Source of the DNA: Styela clava
Lineage: Eukaryota
Assembly: GCF_964204865.1 (NCBI RefSeq)
Contig: NC_135256.1
Coordinates: 18,786,001-18,850,000, forward strand
DNA length: 64,000 nt
Reading direction: 5' to 3'
Shown here piece after piece: positions 54,268 through 64,000 of this stretch. The notes beneath the pieces are model-generated. The model ran no database searches, was not told the DNA's origin, and was given only the letters and a program-made list of their open reading frames with translations. The number at the start of each line of letters is the position of its first letter. The first letter of the stretch is position 1. Made by a program: the position numbers and the translations under genes.

Positions 54268-57200
54268 CTTTGGTCAGATTATTCTTACTCATTTTCTTTT
54301 AGACAACGCTCCACTAGTTGAAGTCAAATTTCATAATAACATTTAGGGATACTTTCTGTGAAATGTTATCTACAGAGTTCTATTTACTTCTACCTTTACG
54401 GGGAAACCAAATTTAAATATTTCGCACCTGGTTTAACTTTATTTACTTTTTAGGATTTGTCTCAAGTTGTTTTTAAATATCTGAATTCTTCCATGAATTT
54501 ATTACTTGTAAGAGTACTTTTATGCTTAATAAGTGCCTTAATATATGTATTCCACAATTTCTTCAAAAACTGCAAAGCTGTTTAACTATGTACAGTACTT
54601 GTCCACTGTTTTTCAAATTATATAAAGTCACCATTATTTCTGAATTATTTACAAGCTCTATTTTATTACCGAGTTTTTCTATGCTGGAAGGATAATATTA
54701 GTCAATATGCAGCACATTGACAGCCGAGATCCCAAAGTTTGGGAATTAAGTTTGTCACCATGCTTAACAACTTGTAAATAAACGTTATTTTGTTACAATT
54801 TTGGTAGTAATTCCAATTTTTTTTTCAAATATATCTTCTCAAATAAACTGAACAAATGTTGTAGGAGTGGAAGCATTGGCAACTTATGCTCAAAACAAAT
54901 GTAGGTGCAAGTTTGAAGTTGCTATTATAGGTTAAAGTAATACAATGCTCTCCTATACACCCAGGCTTCTTATAATTTCGAACAGCTATATTTTATTTGC
55001 AATTCTGACGTCGAGATAAGATTAATATCAAATTTGCTAAGTTGGATAGCCTTTGATTGGTACATTCTTGATTGAAAGCCTTAGTCTCACGAATTGACTA
55101 AATTTGCCATGCTCGAGTGCTTTAAGCAAGTTCTAGAAATGGTATTATGTCTGTCTGAAACGATTAGGTAGGCAGTTTCTTAAAGCTAACACCCATAAGA
55201 AAAATGAATCCAAATTGTGTAATTTCTCATGTTCTCTTTGGCCTTGGACTTACTCTATCATGGAAAACAAGAAGATTTATAAAACATTACAGTGATATCA
55301 TTGTGTTTAGACATTTTATTAGCACAATTACCATATACTTTCATGACCGATATGCAGAAAATAACACATTTTTCGGAGAAATTGTAATTACCAATATGCC
55401 AAATTCGAGGTTGAACATTTTGTAAAATATGTGATAACCACGATGAAACGACAAACACAAAATTGAAAGATACTGAACTAGTAATACATAACAATTATAT
55501 ATATTAAGCATAATATTAAGTGTATATAAATGAGATGCCCATTTCCACTACGGCTTTGGAGGAAAATGGAGCAGGAGGAAAATGGAGCAACAACCATACA
55601 GCAAATCAAATATTTCAATCATATGATTAACCATCCATATAACAAATGAACGTAAAATAATTTATAGGAAACAGATGGTGCTAGCTAGAGAATTCCAGAT
55701 TTTAAAAAACTTAGGAAGTAAATATTTAGTCTAGAACTAGATGTTAGTTAGGTTATGTGAGATTAACAATCTAACTAATGTTAATGACCTTATCCTCACC
55801 CAAATAACTTATCCCTCAATATTCTGTATAATTCACATATAGAAAACGATAATAATACATTTTTCTCATAAATTGCCCCCAATGGAATATTATTTATCGC
55901 AGATATTTATTCTTTCCTCAGTAAAAAGCCAAATCAATTTTTCAAAACAATGATCATTCTGTTCTCACCAACACAAATGAGAAAGCAGAGGGATGAATCT
56001 ATTATCATTTGACACCAAACCATACCAATGAACTGTTAAATGGAACTTTGTGCCAATGAGGCTCTAGCAATAAAGTGAAAGAATTATATTATAAATAGTT
56101 ACAGACAAAAGCTAAATTGTGCAAAAATGGAATTAGCTCTAAGTGGCTTCTATGAAATAGAATTACACACATTTTCAGGGTCTGTAAGTTTTCTTTGGGG
56201 ACACAAGGACGAAATATACCATGAGTTACAAGAACCCATAAATAAAAATTCCACTAGTCTCCTCATTTCACCGAGACGTATGGTAATTACTATTTAAAAA
56301 AGGTAGCTAAAAATACAGCAGGTGAAATGGATGACCAAGAACATTATCTATAAATATCATAGATATCGAGGTGAATCGGGTATAAACAATGAATTTGAAG
56401 CCCTTCTTTAAAACAGCAGCATTCAGTAATGACAAGCATTTATTGCGCCAAAATGTGGAAATGACATTGTTGAACAAAAAACTTGTTACAGCCTTCAATA
56501 AGAATTATTTTCTATTGGGATAATGATTACTTTGAAAATACAGCCCAGGTGGGAGCGAGCAGTCATTGATAAAACATTCTTGGCCAAACAAGACAAATAG
56601 AAGAGTACATCAGTTGATAAAAAATGCAGTACAGTTGACAAGAAAAGGTTGAAAACAACATCATCATATGTACACCAGAGCAAAACTTGTCTTGTTTATA
56701 TGAACAAACTTGTCGCATTCGAATGAGTCCGTTTAACACACAAAATACAGATAGATAGGTGTGTTTTAGTTCTTAACAAGAAAGAAAGACAACATTGTTG
56801 TTGGTGTTGGTTCCATCTTATACATGAAAACGTTGATTATTGGCTGGTCACTACAGAAACTGAAAGACAAAAAATTCTTTGTTAAAACGAAGCACTGGCT
56901 TCCTACAGTAGACTTATCAACATGATTTTTCTTCTGTCATCACAGCACTATAATTTTTTTTATATGCCTCAATAAAAAGTCAAAAAAACTTGAACAAAGG
57001 AGAACTAAACTCACTTGAATGGCATTTTAAGTTAACTACTGACATGCCAGAAAAGAAGATATATCAGCAGTATTTGTCAAGAATGTTATAAGATATCAGA
57101 ATTAATGCAAAAATTGACACGATAAACATAAATTATCACTGATATTGAGTGGATGAGTTAGTTTTTCAGCAAAATATGTAATAAGGTTAGACTTGGTTAT

Positions 57201-57330
57201 ACTTTAGGGAAGTAGTATTGAAATTTTTTTTAAGTGGGTTTGTATCTAGGCTAATGCAATAATCACAAAAAGCATGATTGAATGAAGAAAATTAATCCAA
57301 AACATCCAATACCTGGTCATATCACACTTT

Positions 57331-60300
57331 TCATTTGGTAGAAAAGTAAACTGAAGAAAGCAAAAGCAGCGTGAAAAGAAAAGGCAAAATGCAAATCAAT
57401 GTTGTTAGTTACATACAGTTAAACGATTAGGTGATAGTCTTTGCAGACTAGTTAATTTATGAATGGTCCGTGCCTTCTCGAACATAATATTAATGATTAT
57501 AATTCTATATCTTAGAGTGCCATGCTAAAGCACACAAAGTATATAAAAAATCCATCCCTTGATTAAGAACATAGCATACTATAATTAAATAAGGAAGTGA
57601 TACATGATTCAAAGAGGATGGAAGATGATTCGTTCATGCAACGGAAAAACGAAAGACATGCATGTATGGTGGACAGAGTGTGCAAACGTGCAGAACAGTG
57701 GTTTGCATTAACTTAATAAATTTATTTACATATGTAACCAATTTTCATTGACGTATGTATCTAAACTGGAAAACGACTAAAAATGTGCAGAATAGTATTT
57801 TCATCAGCTTTTGTGCATATTCCGGCGAAAAGATTTGTTTGATAACATATTGTATTTTCATCAAAATGTGTCATATTAATCATTTTATTAGAGTTCTTAT
57901 AAATATGCTAAAATGTATTCATGATTGAACATGCTTTATGTATCAGTTTCTAATGCTTTGCTTTCAGTCCAATATTTGAATTGCACATATTTGTAGATAC
58001 ACTCCTAACTCATTATAAAAATCAATACACTAACCAATGTGTATTATCAATTGGGAAGAGGGATTTCGGTTCCAAAATAAACCAGGTTAACGTTTTCGAC
58101 CCACGAGAAACCGCATTCCCTACTGCTATAAGAGAAAAACCTTTTGCCAATCGATGATGACCTGTCCAAAACCGGTCGATTCACATTTCAAGTCGAGTAT
58201 GAAATGTCAAATCTCGAGCGAATTGTTCAACACTCCCGGGAACGTAGAATTCTTTGGCGCGATAAGTATGAGTCACGTGTCACGTCACGATATTGAGCAT
58301 TGATCAGGCGACGGCAAGCAAGCGGGCGACGGACGATACTGTCGGTAGTTCATTACAAATTCTTAGTTGGAATTGAATGACTCAATGATAACACCGACCA
58401 AATATATTACAAATATTCTCGACGAACTCTTGCCCGTCAACTAAGATCGAAATGTCACGCGGGAGCAAACTAACCGCTTGGATTTTATATTACAAAACTC
58501 AAAATAAATTAGGTTTTTCGGACAAGATATGTTTACAAAAGTTTATCTTTTTGTCTAGATAACTTAAGTAATAAGAGCCTCGACGCAACGCCTTTCGTAA
58601 ACAAAGTTATTCATCGAATGTTTAATAGTTCTTATTCTAACAAAGTTGAACATTCCTCACCAGAGTTCAAGGAAAAAAGGATAGCGATATTCAACGAGGA
58701 GGGAAAAAACGATGAACTGCCGGGGAGGGATTGAGACTTGCGATATTGACATATTGATTTATGGGCGGATGCGTTACACCAAATGCCGACAAGCACATCT
58801 GCCGCCGGCTGCGAGCGATGTAATGCATTTTTTATTCCCAGCTGCTTTTCGCAATAAAACATCGACGGAAATGACATTGTTATTAATATAACAGCGGAAG
58901 ATAATTTACGATGGTAAGTTGTGCGGAATACAATCGACCACATCCATAGGAGTTGTGACAAATTCCGCCGAAAACGGGTTTCAGGATCGTTTGCCGTCCA
59001 TCGATAATTGTAATTTTCACCATTTATGAAATAATATGATCATTTTAAACGCACTGTCGAACATTTTATTCTCAATCGGCGTTTTCATAGCAGCTTTTGC
59101 ATGTAGCCTTTGTTTTTCACGCGAAAACAGACGACGCTGAGTCAAGTTATTGAACTGAGAATACCGACTGGCTATGAAATATTCATGTTACTCCGTCCAG
59201 TGCGCGGACCGACTGCCAGCTTAAAACAGGGTTTTATAGCAGTCGCTTTGGCTACTGCATTCAAATAGCAAATCAATGCGCTGTAATATTCGGCAACAAT
59301 TTCTGTGCCAGAACAAAAGGACAGTATTTTGGTATTACAATTCCAAAACTATTTTTCGGTTGAAACCTCTTATTCAACAATTATTGATACATTGTAAGTT
59401 GCTACATCTTCTCAATAAAATTTTGATACATGTACATAATCTACATTTATAGGCTAAATATCAGTTATATTATTAATATAATATTATTATAATATTATTA
59501 ATCATTGTACAGTATTTATGAGAGCTTTGCTCCTTACACAAAAAGATATCTTGTTTTTGGATTGTAGCACAATAATATCAAATATCTCATCCTAATAGAT
59601 GTAAAATTCATATGTTTCTACTCCGTTATTTGATATCTCTCATGTATTTCCCTGCTCGAAATACACTCATATGAGCAAGTGATGCGGGATTGAACCCAAG
59701 TATAGACTCAAACATTAAACGGCTACCTAATAAAGAAGCAGACAACGATAGAATGAGGCAGCTTGGAGGAATTGTTGTTTCTACTGGTGTGTAATATAGT
59801 GTTATACTAGAAAAAAGCATGCATGCGAAAAGAAAATAGAAAAGACACCCAAACATGCAATGAACGCCTTAATCTGCAAAATATTTAAAATTATCAAATT
59901 ACTAATATTTTTTTCTCATACTCACCTATGATAATAATAAGTATCGCTAAAATAACAACAATCAAAATGGCCCACATCTGAAAAAGACACAAAACATTTA
60001 TCAACATTGATATTTGCAAACACACAAGACAAAATAAAAAGCAAATAATGCAAGCAGAAATTTTGAAACAGTCGAATTATACAATGAGATCCAAAATAGT
60101 ATACAGTATCGATCAAAATAGGAATATACTAGCAATGGAGACTTGGCTTTAATGCACTTACACTAGTGCCTAATGTTACAAAAATTTAGAAAGGAAAGAA
60201 GTTGTTCAACTGGCTTAGATCATTCAAGATTTTGTGTAGACACAATTTGGCAAGAACAAGCCAGTCAAATGTCAGCTGTTTAAATCTATCAGTAGTTGGC

Positions 60301-61998
60301 CAAATGCTTTCAAAATTTCTGGATACATTCCCGAGCACAAATGATAGTAATTGACATTTCCTTTAAGCACTGATACATTGAAAAAAACATTGTTGATAAC
60401 AGGAGAGCTATCAACAAGAGTAAATAACTGACTAGCTTTCCATGCTCACACCACATTCACTTGGACAAATACGAATGCCACTTCTATTTGGCAATTGAAA
60501 GTACTTACTAACGATAATCGCGATAATAATTATGATAACAACTGAGAGCATGATAATCATCTGTGAAAAACAAGGGATTTTCAAAAAATGTTGGAGTCAG
60601 AACAACTGAAAATAACAGTTATTAAGCGACTAATAAGTATGGTGATATTTGCATGCTTTCTACAAAATATTCCATACTGTAGTCCTCATGAAATACTGCA
60701 ACTTGAAAAGTGAATTCACATTCTAAATGTTTAAATCATACCCACAGAAAGAGAAAATCTATGTTAAATTCACTTACACTATAGATTATTATGATATCAT
60801 ATTCTCAGAATAGTAAATTATTTGTAAAATTTAAATAAACATGTTGCGTGAATAAACAGAAGCAAATTATTCAATGAACAAATAGAGAAGTGAAACAAGA
60901 TATGGAAACATCTTATCATGTGCTTATTCATTATTCAAAATTTTTGTTTCAATGTAAAATGCTTAGTCATGTAGTATAAATGTAAAATACAGGTCACAAT
61001 CATATGATCATAAATATATTTTGATGTATGCAATTGTTTACTTTAATTGTATGCATGGTTATAATAGAATAAAAATCATATGTCATATCTTTGTTTGCAA
61101 ACTTGATAATATATGGAAATACACACGTAAAAAGCCAACTACATATTTCTGTGATAAAGTTCATGAAAAACATTACAATGTTGATCATTATTGGTCTCGT
61201 ATTTCCATCCTATGAGCAAATATGTTGTCCAAAGTAAAGACAATCTCCATTGATAACATATATTTGGTTTGCAAACTTTGTTGCTCAAATCCAGTATTCA
61301 ATTTCAGGACATACTATCACTCAACATTGATAGAAACAATTTTAGTATTTATTCGAAACTTATCAATAAATTGATTCAATATACCTTGCAGTTCTTCCAC
61401 CAATATTTTCTCTTGAGTTTTGCAGCTTGTGTCTCAAATTGTGAAGCTCCTTGTTGTAATGCATCTGCTCTGTCATCTAATTCAGATAATTTTTGATCTC
61501 TCTCCAAAACTTTGTCAACATTTGTCCTCATAATATCTACCACCTATATTAAAGATAAAACCATTATTTGTCTGTTGCTGGAAGGAAGAGTAGCAGTAGC
61601 ACAAAAATTGTGATAGTGTCCAAATGAAGTAGTTGAATCATATTTGAATAAGTCTCAAACCAACAAACCATATAAATCATGGAATAGACTTTTTTTATAT
61701 ATCAGAAAATATATTACATTTCTACTGAATTTGGTTTTAAAACCAAAACTAAAATAATATAATCTGGAGATGTTTGTTTAATCTAGCCCACCGTGAAAAA
61801 ACCACAAAATTGAAACTTGCCATATTCAGAAAACCGAAGCACGATAGAGTCAAGATAACATAAAACTTAGCATAAACACTCATATGATAAACACACTATT
61901 CTATGGCAATTCAAACCTCATCAACTTGTGCTTGAGTCTGTTGCAGCCTTTTGCTTGATGGTCCCCCTGTTGGAGCGGAGTCAGTACCTCCATACGAC
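57331..61998 (-). CDS. VAMP2: Synaptobrevin/VAMP1-2-3-like R-SNARE, partial (AT of the split start codon in an upstream exon not found in the window); exons 61917-61998, 61385-61543, TM exon 60509-60560 or 59926-59977, terminal exon 57331-57350 (alternative 56837-56859)
   Basis: Reads [13 protein letters not shown]|[53 protein letters not shown]|TM|VYFSTK*. The exon structure, including the AT|G split start, resembles vertebrate VAMP1/2/3. It is probably co-orthologous to all three. Confidence 0.92.
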
Positions 61999-64000
61999 CT
62001 TTTAATAAAGAAAAATATTTAACTCAAAAAAATATTACTAAAAATACATTACTGAATATTTATTAAGTGACCAAATTAAAATAAAATAAAATAGAATAAC
62101 TCACTGGTTAATATTGTTTGATAACATGTTTCCACTTAGGGTAGCATTGTAAGAAGGTAAGGAAACAGAAATGAAATTTCATAACAGTATAATATATAGT
62201 AATTTCAACAAATTTATATTCATTCAAATAGTTATTTTTAACAACAAATTTCCCAGGAATAAATAAATGTATGCTTCAGGAAAATTTGAAACCAATTTGA
62301 AACCGTTCGTTGATTATAGCGTAACTAAAATTGAATTACTCATTTAATCACATACGATCATAACCAAATTGTTGTCAAAAAAAAACTGAAGTTGGACTAA
62401 ATTACTCTTCAATAAAACATATAAAGTAACCCCTTTAAAATAACTGTCCTGTGATAAAGGATTTTTATTAATGAATCAATATAAAATATTACAATGAAAT
62501 TGGATTGATTATATAGATTTGTGGAAACTGCCATTGATGACATATGGAAGAGAAAGCATAATTTCAGAACTACCAGTTCAAAAATCTTTTTTCATAATCA
62601 ATGAGAATCAATACATGAAGTTATCATCATATGGGCCCAATAAAATCAATGCAATGCCAGAAGCAATCAATCAATAAGGTAATTAAAAACCTTATGATCA
62701 AAATTTGACTGCATTTGTCAAAATAAAATTTCAAAAAATAGGAATCATGGAAATGACATATGAATGCTGATACAAATCAAACTAAAACAAGTTCATATTG
62801 ATGAATGAATTATGATATTGCCTCGATAATATTACATGATGACATGTGAGCATATGTAAATATAATTGAAACATTTAGGTATAATAAACATTCAGTTATA
62901 CTTCAAAATAAAAATTCTTGGTCCAATTGAGTTAATTAACCACATGCATAGACATAAAAGACATCCTATTTCCTATATCAATTCAGATTTTGAAGCATAA
63001 TTTCAAAATTGTGTTAGGAATTGTACATTTAGCCAAATCCAATTCCAATAGTATAGCATTGTATATTGTACAATGAAAAATTTTATGCTTGATATCTGCT
63101 ATAAATTTCAATTCCATGTTGCAGAAAAGAAAAGGATCACGCACACATACATCACAATCACGTTGAAAATTAAAAAAAAATAACAAATTAAAAATTAAAG
63201 TTATCAACATCAATTTATTTTTACCTTTCACTGGGGACAGGCTGGTAGTTTGCCATTGTCTATTCTTGATATTGAATTGTGTAAGCTACCAAGTCATGGC
63301 CACAAAAATATGAAGTGTTATGGCTTGAAATAATGGTAAAAATGATATTTAAATCAAAAGGAATTCCAGAAGTGGAATTGAATCTAAATGCATCCTCACC
63401 CTTAGATGTGTATACAATGCGATAGAAGTTAAAACGGTCGCAAACTATATCCTGTGCCATACATATTTTTCTTATATAAGCATACTTCTTACTTAAGAAA
63501 TAACATGAATTCATATTACTCATACCATAAATTAAATATAAGGATATTACATAATTAAATCATAGAAATACTAATATAGTATAATATTTATGATAATGAA
63601 GGTTTTAAATGATGAAGCAATGCAGGAATAAAGTTAGTATGGATGAGATATTATATTTCATTTCACTTCAATAAATTACACCATTTTCCTTGTCCACCCA
63701 AATTTCAATTACGCTGTCCTTATGCTGTTGTCATTTTGAGAGCAATATTTATTTATGTGGTAACTAGACTATCACTAGAATCGATTACAAGAATAGATCT
63801 ACAGATCAGTATAACGAAAAATTATTTAATATGAGAATCCAGATTTTTAATTGTAATAAAGACCCAGCCATACAAATCACAACAACATACTTAGAATATG
63901 AAAGCAATCACAACTAATTGTTGAAGTTGTAAGTTCAGTTTTCTAAAATTTATTGTCACAAATTCAATTTGATACGTACCGTACCCGCTACCTACCATTC

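What the first reader, a model, noticed from the sequence alone, without database searches (positions are those of the whole stretch)
59926..60560. Synaptobrevin has two duplicated, apparently mutually exclusive transmembrane exons
Seen: after the ...KYWWKNCK exon there are two exons of exactly 52 nt, both phase 0 to phase 1 with strong splice sites. Exon A at 60509-60560 (ttttcacag|...|gtaagt) encodes [17 protein letters not shown]. Exon B at 59926-59977 (tctttttcag|...|gtgagt) encodes [17 protein letters not shown]. Including both shifts the frame, and skipping both removes the membrane anchor. Known: vertebrate VAMP2 and VAMP3 are separate genes whose TMs begin MMIIL and MWAI respectively. 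Inference: one pre-duplication gene may make VAMP2-like and VAMP3-like membrane anchors by exon switching, so the paralog difference could predate the gene duplications.
Basis: partly seen in the sequence, partly recalled or inferred. Interest (0 to 1): 0.8.

Follow-up and report, generated by a model that had tools for sequence, protein, structure and literature searches.

The report
Alternative membrane-anchor exons in sea-squirt synaptobrevin
The only synaptobrevin/VAMP gene of the sea squirt Styela clava swaps between two 52-base membrane-anchor exons and two tail endings, one combination resembling vertebrate VAMP3 and the other partly resembling VAMP1/2; automatic RefSeq annotation already lists these isoforms, but I found no paper describing them.

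Summary
The two exons lie exactly where stated on the minus strand: A at 60560-60509 and B at 59977-59926. Both are 52 nt, phase 0 to 1, with good splice sites. They are the only hydrophobic mini-exons in the 7.3-kb gene.

The window is Styela clava LOC120328415, the only brevin gene in that genome.

RNA contigs show the junctions exon3->A, A->e5 and e5->e6, and B->e6. No A->B junction appears in four runs. One sample uses only A and another uses both. The exon3->B junction is seen directly only in a near-identical relative's transcript and in RefSeq models.

A 38-nt cassette, e5 (57350-57313), carries the YFSTK stop. Skipping it gives the tail SVVTSQ from e6 (starts 56859).

The same scheme is annotated in Ciona and Clavelina. 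Ticks and a spider also have two alternative 17-residue anchors.

Exon B with e6 is clearly VAMP3-like or ancestral (12.9 of 17 identities). Exon A cannot be assigned to VAMP1/2 from its anchor residues. The VAMP2 likeness lies mainly in the e5 tail.

The evolutionary inference is therefore partly supported. RefSeq already holds the isoforms, and I found no paper on them.

The parts
63225..63256 (-). Exon 1: start codon and MANYQPVPSE plus 2 nt.
   Evidence: Sequence. tblastn of RefSeq isoforms gives 100% identity. The loose ends at 62002 in runs X1, X4 and X5 read into this exon.
62105..62134 (-). Alternative 30-nt micro-exon e1b, encoding (S)GNMLSNNIN(Q).
   Evidence: The loose end at 61998 in run X1 reads into it. 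It is present in RefSeq isoforms P0239, P0302, P0304, P0305, P0307 and P0308.
61917..61998 (-). Exon 2: (R/Q)[27 protein letters not shown].
   Evidence: Junction 61917->61543 in run X4 at depth 226. Sequence. tblastn.
61385..61543 (-). Exon 3: core of the R-SNARE motif, ending in KYWWKNCK. It ends in phase 0.
   Evidence: Translation. PF00957 match of 82.6 bits. Contig 15 of run X4 covers it.
60509..60560 (-). Exon A: 52-nt membrane-anchor exon, [17 protein letters not shown] plus A.
   Evidence: Junction 61385->60560 in run X4. Junction 60509->57350 in run X1 (depth 670) and run X4. Present in RefSeq X5 and X7.
59926..59977 (-). Exon B: 52-nt membrane-anchor exon, [17 protein letters not shown] plus G.
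   Evidence: In run X4 a high-depth contig over B carries a loose end at 59926 that is the reverse complement of the start of e6. Present in RefSeq X6 and X8. P0124 carries an identical 17-residue peptide directly after exon 3.
57313..57350 (-). Cassette exon e5, 38 nt. It completes the I/V codon, then encodes YFSTK and a TGA stop.
   Evidence: Sequence. A->e5 junction. The loose end at 57313 in run X1 runs on into e6. Frames checked.
56837..56859 (-). Start of terminal exon e6. When e5 is skipped it reads (I/V)SVVTSQ and a TAA stop. The 3' UTR continues below 56837 and its end was not determined.
   Evidence: The acceptor tttgtctttcag|TTTCTGTAG is located. It matches the loose ends of runs X1 and X4. 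RefSeq X5 and X6 have this tail.

Best explanation
This is the single synaptobrevin/cellubrevin-type (brevin) v-SNARE gene of Styela clava. Its cytoplasmic SNARE motif is constant. Its tail anchor is assembled from two adjacent alternative-splicing modules.

Module 1 is a pair of 52-nt exons, A and B. Exactly one must be included to keep the frame and give a normal 17-residue anchor.

Module 2 is a 38-nt cassette, e5. When included it ends the protein in YFSTK. When skipped the protein ends in SVVTSQ, read from e6.

In the RNA contigs examined, A is joined to e5 and B is joined to e6, and usage differs between samples. B with e6 is the ancestral, VAMP3-like C-terminus. A with e5 is a second anchor whose tail matches vertebrate VAMP1/2.

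The likely function is inferred, not shown. The gene would make v-SNAREs with the same SNARE motif but different membrane anchors for different vesicle classes or cell types. Vertebrates do the same job with separate VAMP1/2 and VAMP3 genes.

How single inclusion is enforced is unknown. The frame rule explains only why single inclusion is the productive outcome.
For: - Anatomy and frames.
- Splice junctions with GT..AG ends in RNA-derived contigs: 61917->61543, 61385->60560 and 60509->57350. The B donor 59926 and the e5 donor 57313 both continue into the e6 sequence. No A->B junction appears in four runs from three studies.
- Sample dependence: in run X1 a single intron-depth contig runs unbroken through B while the A->e5 junction has depth 670. 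In run X4 the contigs break at both B splice sites and a high-depth contig covers B.
- The run X4 intron contig starts at 59950. For 31-mer assembly graphs, that is what a branch 2 nt upstream of the B acceptor would give. Those 2 nt are the AG shared with the ...CAAG end of exon 3. Exon A ends ...GTTA and would not give this. The k=31 value is from my own knowledge, so this is an inference.
- RefSeq isoforms X5-X8 of LOC120328415 are A+e6, B+e6, A+e5 and B+e5. They map exon by exon onto the window.
- The same 2x2 scheme is annotated in Ciona intestinalis (X4-X10) and Clavelina (X1-X3). Unnamed transcripts show it too: P0124 (3-B-e6), P0252 (A-e5-e6) and P0128 (B-e5).
- MIIMLS.. and MWAILI.. 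are each conserved across three ascidian orders.
- There is one brevin gene in the genome.
- B versus VAMP3 gives 12.9 of 17 identities. The tails IYFSTK (tunicate) and IYFCT (VAMP1/2-like proteins P0031, P0041, P0042), and VSVVTSQ (Styela) and VWVVTSQQKKE (Owenia), can be compared.
- Natural v-SNARE transmembrane variants change fusion-pore kinetics (PMC7239655).
Against: - No contig in the four Styela runs shows the exon3->B junction directly. The reads tool silently drops human-like contigs, and exon 3 is highly conserved.
- All four runs are assembled contigs, which drop rare variants and give no counts. The labels 'never together' and 'A pairs with e5, B with e6' therefore rest on presence only.
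- RefSeq lists four double-inclusion models (X1-X4) and both mixed combinations (X5 and X8).
- Double inclusion would not be removed by the usual nonsense-mediated decay rule. Its stop codon lies in e5, 4 nt before the last junction, or in e6.
- The tissue identity of the runs is coded, so a neural versus non-neural assignment is untested.
- Anchors A and B have the same share of beta-branched residues in their first nine positions (5 of 9 each, my count). The published flexibility rule therefore predicts no difference between them.
Confidence: 0.8

Rival explanations
1. Exon A arose by tandem duplication of the ancestral MW-type exon within tunicates. Its resemblance to VAMP1/2 is then coincidental or convergent, and the VAMP2/VAMP3 anchor difference does not predate the vertebrate gene duplications.
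For: Ascidian A anchors are equally distant from VAMP1/2 (6.6 of 17) and VAMP3 (6.7 of 17). A second tunicate-type exon class begins with MW but has Gly at position 6 (MW[LI]ILG.., in P0155, P0176 and P0235), showing that this slot evolves fast.
Against: The e5 tail IYFS/TTK matches VAMP1/2 and cyclostome IYFxx tails. The exon length and phase appear to be the same in vertebrates. Partial VAMP1/2 models stop after exactly 17 anchor residues, or run on as SE or GE, which is one extra nt followed by gtgag (P0035, P0040, P0078, P0110). Position 6 is small (S or G) in A-type and VAMP1/2 anchors, and I in B-type and VAMP3 anchors.
Confidence: 0.4
2. The alternative anchor-exon pair is much older, dating to the bilaterian ancestor, and has been lost repeatedly. 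Tunicates and chelicerates would be the lineages that kept it.
For: Ticks have MWAILIGVIAIIIIIII and MIAIMVGIGVVVVVIII on otherwise identical isoforms (P0335 and P0334). The spider Larinioides has the same two types at one locus (P0225 and P0243). Both MM/MI-type and MW-type anchors occur in protostomes and in deuterostomes.
Against: Molluscs, an annelid, a nemertean, a hemichordate and echinoderms showed only one anchor type in the isoforms seen here, although sampling covered only 90%-identity clusters. Chelicerate MIAIMVG and ascidian MIIMLSV share few positions. Tandem exon duplication recurs easily.
Confidence: 0.2
3. The two exons are not mutually exclusive in practice. Transcripts containing A and B together are a substantial product, encoding the A anchor with an out-of-frame lumenal extension.
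For: RefSeq X1-X4 (P0307, P0303, P0239, P0306) and an old Ciona entry (P0310) are double-inclusion models. Such mRNAs would escape the 50-nt nonsense-mediated decay rule (my reading).
Against: No 60509->59977 junction is seen in four runs, while A->e5 reaches depth 670. The out-of-frame tail differs completely between Styela and Ciona, so it is not conserved. Gnomon numbers its longest coding sequences first, whatever their abundance (my knowledge).
Confidence: 0.1
4. One of the two exons is an unused pseudo-exon.
For: None beyond the lack of a direct exon3->B contig.
Against: A high-depth spliced B contig is present in run X4. P0124 and several other transcripts read exon 3 directly into B. 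Both peptides are conserved across ascidian orders.
Confidence: 0.02

Closest known systems
SNAP-25 exons 5a/5b (vertebrates)
   Same: A SNARE gene with a tandemly duplicated exon. The two copies are spliced in a mutually exclusive way to give functionally distinct isoforms (PMC2581893, found).
   Different: That pair encodes part of a SNARE motif and the palmitoylation linker, not a transmembrane anchor. The exon length there is a multiple of 3. There is no coupled tail cassette.
unc-64/syntaxin A and B anchors in C. elegans (also alternative anchors of mammalian syntaxins 2 and 3)
   Same: Alternative splicing gives one SNARE two different C-terminal hydrophobic anchors with tissue-specific use and incomplete functional equivalence (PMC4946901).
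   Different: That case uses alternative terminal exons (8a and 8b) in a Q-SNARE, regulated through intron retention by a CELF protein. Here there are two internal 52-nt exons plus a stop-carrying cassette in an R-SNARE.
VAMP1A/VAMP1B-type alternative C-termini of vertebrate VAMP1
   Same: The last few residues after the anchor exon are exchanged by alternative use of the exon that follows. This corresponds in position to the e5/e6 choice here. Lamprey (IYFSI / AVYTNK) and hagfish (IYFCV / ISQYS) isoforms show the same thing. The mammalian VAMP1A/B case is cited from my own knowledge.
   Different: In vertebrates the anchor exon itself is single in each gene, as far as the proteins seen here show.
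Vertebrate VAMP3 (cellubrevin) and VAMP1/2 (synaptobrevins) as separate paralogues
   Same: B with e6 matches VAMP3 and invertebrate MW-type C-termini. The A-with-e5 tail matches VAMP1/2.
   Different: Here the two come from one gene by splicing. The A anchor itself cannot be assigned to VAMP1/2.
Chelicerate brevin genes (ticks, spiders)
   Same: Two alternative 17-residue anchor exons at the same place in the protein, one of them MW-type.
   Different: The second type is MIAIMVG... Chelicerates also have a duplicated alternative exon for the first half of the SNARE motif. Homology with tunicate exon A was not established.

Membership tests
Synaptobrevin/VAMP R-SNARE, brevin type (PF00957) | Match to the Synaptobrevin profile above Pfam's cut-off. 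| tested here: met
   82.6 bits against a cut-off of 26.4 at G000:C8:18847331-18847546, which is window exon 3. All protein hits carry PF00957.
Synaptobrevin/VAMP R-SNARE, brevin type (PF00957) | Zero-layer arginine in the SNARE motif (..LDDRADAL..). | tested here: met
   The exon 3 translation contains [11 protein letters not shown]. Identifying this arginine as the zero-layer residue is from my knowledge of VAMP2.
Synaptobrevin/VAMP R-SNARE, brevin type (PF00957) | Short N-terminus without a longin domain, and a single C-terminal anchor. | tested here: met
   The RefSeq isoforms are 124-125 aa and map to the window. The longin-type VAMP7 is a different locus, L001.
Mutually exclusive, tandemly duplicated exons | Adjacent exons of the same length and phase, at the same position in the protein. 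| tested here: met
   Both are 52 nt, phase 0 to 1, and 531 nt apart.
Mutually exclusive, tandemly duplicated exons | Recognisable sequence homology between the two copies. | tested here: inconclusive
   8 of 17 residues and 27 of 52 nt are identical without gaps. Both copies are Ile/Val/Leu-rich, so composition inflates this figure.
Mutually exclusive, tandemly duplicated exons | Each copy is spliced on its own between the same flanking exons. | tested here: inconclusive
   For A, both junctions are seen. For B, the donor junction is seen, and the acceptor junction with exon 3 is only inferred in Styela. The exon3->B join is direct in P0124 and in the RefSeq X6 and X8 models. In the contigs the downstream partners differ: A goes to e5 and B goes to e6.
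Mutually exclusive, tandemly duplicated exons | The two copies are not found together in mature mRNA. | tested here: inconclusive
   No A->B junction appears in four runs of contigs, but contigs drop rare forms and RefSeq X1-X4 are double-inclusion models.
VAMP3-type anchor (exon B) versus VAMP1/2-type anchor (exon A) | The anchor peptide is closer to one vertebrate paralogue class than to the other. | tested here: met
   For exon B: 12.9 of 17 with VAMP3 against 6.2 with VAMP1/2. The first six residues, MWAILI, are identical to shark, frog and platypus VAMP3.
VAMP3-type anchor (exon B) versus VAMP1/2-type anchor (exon A) | Exon A is closer to VAMP1/2 than to VAMP3. | tested here: not met
   6.6 against 6.7 of 17. 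Only positions 3-6 (I-M/I-L-S/G) and the separately encoded IYFSTK tail resemble VAMP1/2.

The most novel reading that the evidence does not exclude
The two-module C-terminus ([A or B] with [e5 or e6]) already existed in the single brevin gene of the last common ancestor of tunicates and vertebrates, and possibly earlier given the chelicerate pairs. After the vertebrate genome duplications the splice forms were partitioned between paralogues. VAMP1/2 kept the A-type anchor exon and the YFxT tail exon. VAMP3 kept the MW-type exon and the ancestral tail. Cyclostome genes, with an MW-type anchor and alternative YF or other tails, would be intermediates. The synaptobrevin/cellubrevin division of labour would then be older than the genes that now embody it.
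Probability: 0.35. Interest if true: 0.7.

Novelty: new member of a known kind. Interest (0 to 1): 0.45.

Why it matters
The membrane anchor of synaptobrevin takes an active part in opening the fusion pore, and natural anchor variants change release kinetics (PMC7239655). A chordate that has a single brevin gene and makes two conserved anchors and two tails by splicing is a natural experiment. It could show what the VAMP2/VAMP3 anchor difference is for. It is also a candidate textbook case of splice isoforms being partitioned into paralogues after genome duplication. The idea can be tested in Ciona, which has the same exons and good transgenic tools. The limits are clear. RefSeq pipelines have already predicted the isoforms. 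The assignment of exon A to VAMP1/2 is unproven. Similar exon pairs in ticks and spiders mean the history may be either deeper or repeated.

Tried and rejected
1. Competing RNA structures as the exclusivity mechanism. An intron segment at 60374-60399 can pair with 60931-60956 (upstream of A) or with 59998-60019 (just upstream of B). The duplex energies of -12.1 and -10.9 kcal/mol are ordinary for this AT-rich intron, ranking 121 and 22 of 145 windows. Rejected.

2. A 27-nt inverted repeat pairs the e5 polypyrimidine region (57369-57395) with 59096-59122 at -27 kcal/mol. The 3' splice-site region is not exceptional: 19 of 82 intron windows do as well, and 9 of 200 shuffles do. Not supported.

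I report an identity matrix instead.

5. [quoted passage not shown] It is 5 of 9 in both A and B by my count, so it does not discriminate.

6. A third anchor-like exon or decayed copy within the gene. None was found.

7. Rfam families in 56000-64000. None was found.

8. Literature on alternative anchor exons in VAMP. Seven searches found nothing specific.

Searches used exon 3 by reference and proteins that the database returned. Exon combinations were translated only inside a script, to read the C-terminal frames.

10. The large representative-protein search was not used. Its 50%-identity clusters cannot separate isoforms.
Full report
**What is in the sequence.** The gene runs on the minus strand.
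- Exon 3 (61543-61385) encodes VVDIMRTN...KYWWKNCK and ends in phase 0.
- Exon A (60560-60509) and exon B (59977-59926) follow. Each is exactly 52 nt and begins with ATG directly after a pyrimidine-rich acceptor: ttttcacag| for A and tctttttcag| for B. Each ends one base into a codon before gtaagt (A) or gtgagt (B).
- They encode [17 protein letters not shown] and [17 protein letters not shown].
- A scan of the 7.3-kb gene for AG..GT-bounded open mini-exons that are at least 80% hydrophobic returns only these two.

**Which gene and organism.** A word search with the exon 3 peptide, given by reference, followed by searches with proteins the database returned, led to the RefSeq proteins of Styela clava LOC120328415.
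- These proteins map exon by exon onto the window at 100% identity within exons.
- A six-frame PF00957 search of the window's own assembly finds 14 R-SNARE exon matches. Only this locus resembles exon 3 closely. The best-scoring other locus is an intronless longin-type VAMP7.
- Styela therefore has one brevin gene.

- A 38-nt exon, e5 (57350-57313), completes the split codon and reads YFSTK then TGA.
- It has its own donor (GACCAG|gtattg) and is spliced to a terminal exon, e6, which starts at 56859.
- If e5 is skipped, e6 reads SVVTSQ then TAA.
- Four productive C-termini are therefore possible. A gives I and B gives V at the split codon, and either tail can follow.

**RNA evidence.** Four runs from three studies were laid on 56900-62100. 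All are kept as assembled contigs. They carry high-depth spliced contigs on top of intron-level coverage of about 10x, so they behave as RNA.
- Junctions with GT..AG ends: 61917->61543, 61385->60560 (run X4), and 60509->57350 (run X1 at depth 670, and run X4).
- The e5 donor (run X1) and the exon B donor 59926 (run X4) both continue with the reverse complement of the e6 start. So e5->e6 and B->e6 are real, and B skips e5.
- No 60509->59977 (A->B) junction and no B->e5 junction was reported.
- In run X1 one intron-depth contig runs unbroken through exon B, while A is strongly spliced.
- In run X4 the contigs break at both B splice sites and the bin over B has more depth than the bin over A.
- Usage is therefore sample-dependent. 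The samples are coded, so tissues are unknown.
- No contig shows exon3->B directly. The tool warns that conserved, human-like contigs are dropped silently, and exon 3 is missing altogether from run X1.
- Indirect support: the run X4 intron contig begins at 59950. For a 31-mer graph (k from my knowledge), that fits a branch 2 nt upstream of the acceptor, matching the AG that ends exon 3 (..CAAG) and not the end of exon A (..GTTA).
- Direct support comes from elsewhere. P0124 is a Logan transcript product from a very close relative. It reads exon 3, then a 17-of-17 identical B peptide, then VSVVTNNP. RefSeq X6 and X8 also read exon 3 into B.

**Annotation already holds this.** RefSeq lists eight Styela isoforms:

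| Isoform | Composition |
|---|---|
| X5 | A + e6 |
| X6 | B + e6 |
| X7 | A + e5 |
| X8 | B + e5 |
| X1-X4 | A and B together, out-of-frame tail NVGHFDCC... |

- Ciona intestinalis X4-X10 and Clavelina X1-X3 follow the same scheme. In Clavelina the two forms are even named VAMP2-like and VAMP3-like.
- Unnamed transcripts show A-e5-e6 (P0252) and B-e5 (P0128).
- The out-of-frame tail of the double-inclusion models differs completely between Styela and Ciona. That argues it is not a selected product.
- Such mRNAs would not be caught by the usual nonsense-mediated decay rule (my reading), and contigs cannot exclude a minor form.

**Conservation and comparison.**
- MIIMLS[VM]V.. and MWAILI.. are each conserved across stolidobranch, phlebobranch and aplousobranch ascidians, so both exons are under selection.
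- Exon B matches vertebrate VAMP3 anchors at 12.9 of 17 positions, the same level as within each group. It shares MWAILI with shark, frog, alligator and platypus VAMP3, with lamprey and hagfish, and with chiton, mussel and annelid proteins.
- The e6 tail VSVVTSQ resembles annelid VWVVTSQQKKE and mollusc VWAVTSQQ.. B with e6 is therefore the ancestral, VAMP3-like C-terminus.
- Exon A is no closer to VAMP1/2 (6.6) than to VAMP3 (6.7). Its likeness to VAMP1/2 is confined to positions 3-6 and to a small residue at position 6.
- The strong VAMP1/2 signature is the e5 tail: IYFSTK against IYFCT (P0031, P0041, P0042).
- Exon boundaries appear shared with vertebrates. Partial VAMP1/2 models stop after exactly 17 anchor residues or read on as SE or GE, which is one nt followed by gtgag.
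- Cyclostome genes have one MW-type anchor with alternative tails: IYFSI or AVYTNK in lamprey, and IYFCV or ISQYS in hagfish.
- Unidentified plankton transcripts with the tunicate-type MSYGG start show two anchors on identical N-terminal sequences: MW.ILI.. and MW.ILG..
- Ticks (MWAILIGVIAIIIIIII and MIAIMVGIGVVVVVIII on the same tail) and a spider also have two alternative 17-residue anchors.
- A tree could not be built on 17 columns.

**Reading.**
- Shown: the two exons exist, both are spliced, they are alternatives in the productive mRNAs, they are conserved in ascidians, and a second tail switch sits next to them.
- Inferred: A pairs preferentially with e5 and B with e6. The two anchors would serve different vesicle classes or cell types.
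- Partly supported: the vertebrate VAMP1/2 versus VAMP3 difference descends from these splice modules. The case is good for B with e6 and for the e5 tail, and unresolved for the A anchor.
- Rivals are a tunicate-specific origin of A and a much older or repeated origin, as the chelicerates suggest.
- The mechanism that enforces single inclusion is unknown. Two candidate RNA pairings were tested and do not stand out from background.

**Known relatives of the phenomenon.**
- SNAP-25 exons 5a/5b (PMC2581893).
- Alternative syntaxin anchors in unc-64 (PMC4946901).
- Alternative VAMP1 C-termini (my knowledge).
- Natural v-SNARE anchor variants that alter fusion-pore kinetics give a plausible functional readout (PMC7239655).
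- Seven full-text searches found no paper on alternative anchor exons in a VAMP gene.

**Limits.**
- The reads were contigs only, and only one read-laying run was allowed.

Noticed in passing
window 62105-62134 (-): A 30-nt alternative micro-exon between exons 1 and 2 inserts (S)GNMLSNNIN(Q). It appears as a loose end in run X1 and in six of the eight RefSeq isoforms.
   Followed up: partly
window about 62003 (-), upstream partner not located: A contig in run X5 joins exon 2 to a different upstream sequence that lies outside the laid stretch. It is probably the alternative first exon behind the MSYGG-start isoforms (RefSeq X4, P0124).
   Followed up: no
window 58100-59300: A roughly 1.2-kb block noticeably richer in G+C than the surrounding AT-rich intron (by eye) sits inside the B-e5 intron. 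Its only ORF of 70 aa or more is a 109-aa TTG-start ORF (58632-58961, minus strand), and it has no Rfam match. It is covered at intron depth in the RNA contigs. It may be an old insertion.
   Followed up: partly
window 57369-57395 and 59096-59122: This is the longest inverted repeat in the region: 27 nt, 85% complementary, -27 kcal/mol. One arm lies on the e5 polypyrimidine tract. It could mask the e5 acceptor, but it is not significant against background windows (19 of 82) and only marginal against shuffles (9 of 200).
   Followed up: yes
proteins P0331/P0333 vs P0330, P0346/P0243 (ticks, spiders): Chelicerate brevin genes also carry a duplicated alternative exon for the first half of the SNARE motif ([11 protein letters not shown].. 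versus VVGIMRVNVEK..). Some spider gene models wrongly include both copies. A tick isoform (P0340) has no anchor at all.
   Followed up: partly
L001 (G000:C1:21531851-21535111), ORF 1120-1818: An intronless 232-aa longin-type VAMP7 gene in the same genome.
   Followed up: partly
proteins P0131/P0176, P0132/P0235, P0126/P0165: Marine metatranscriptome products with the tunicate-type MSYGG N-terminus come in pairs. Within a pair the cytoplasmic part is identical or nearly so (one K/R difference in P0126/P0165), but the anchor is either MW.ILI.. or MW.ILG..VVL.III. The Gly-type matches bird VAMP2-like anchors at 13 of 17 positions (my count). The organisms are unidentified.
   Followed up: partly
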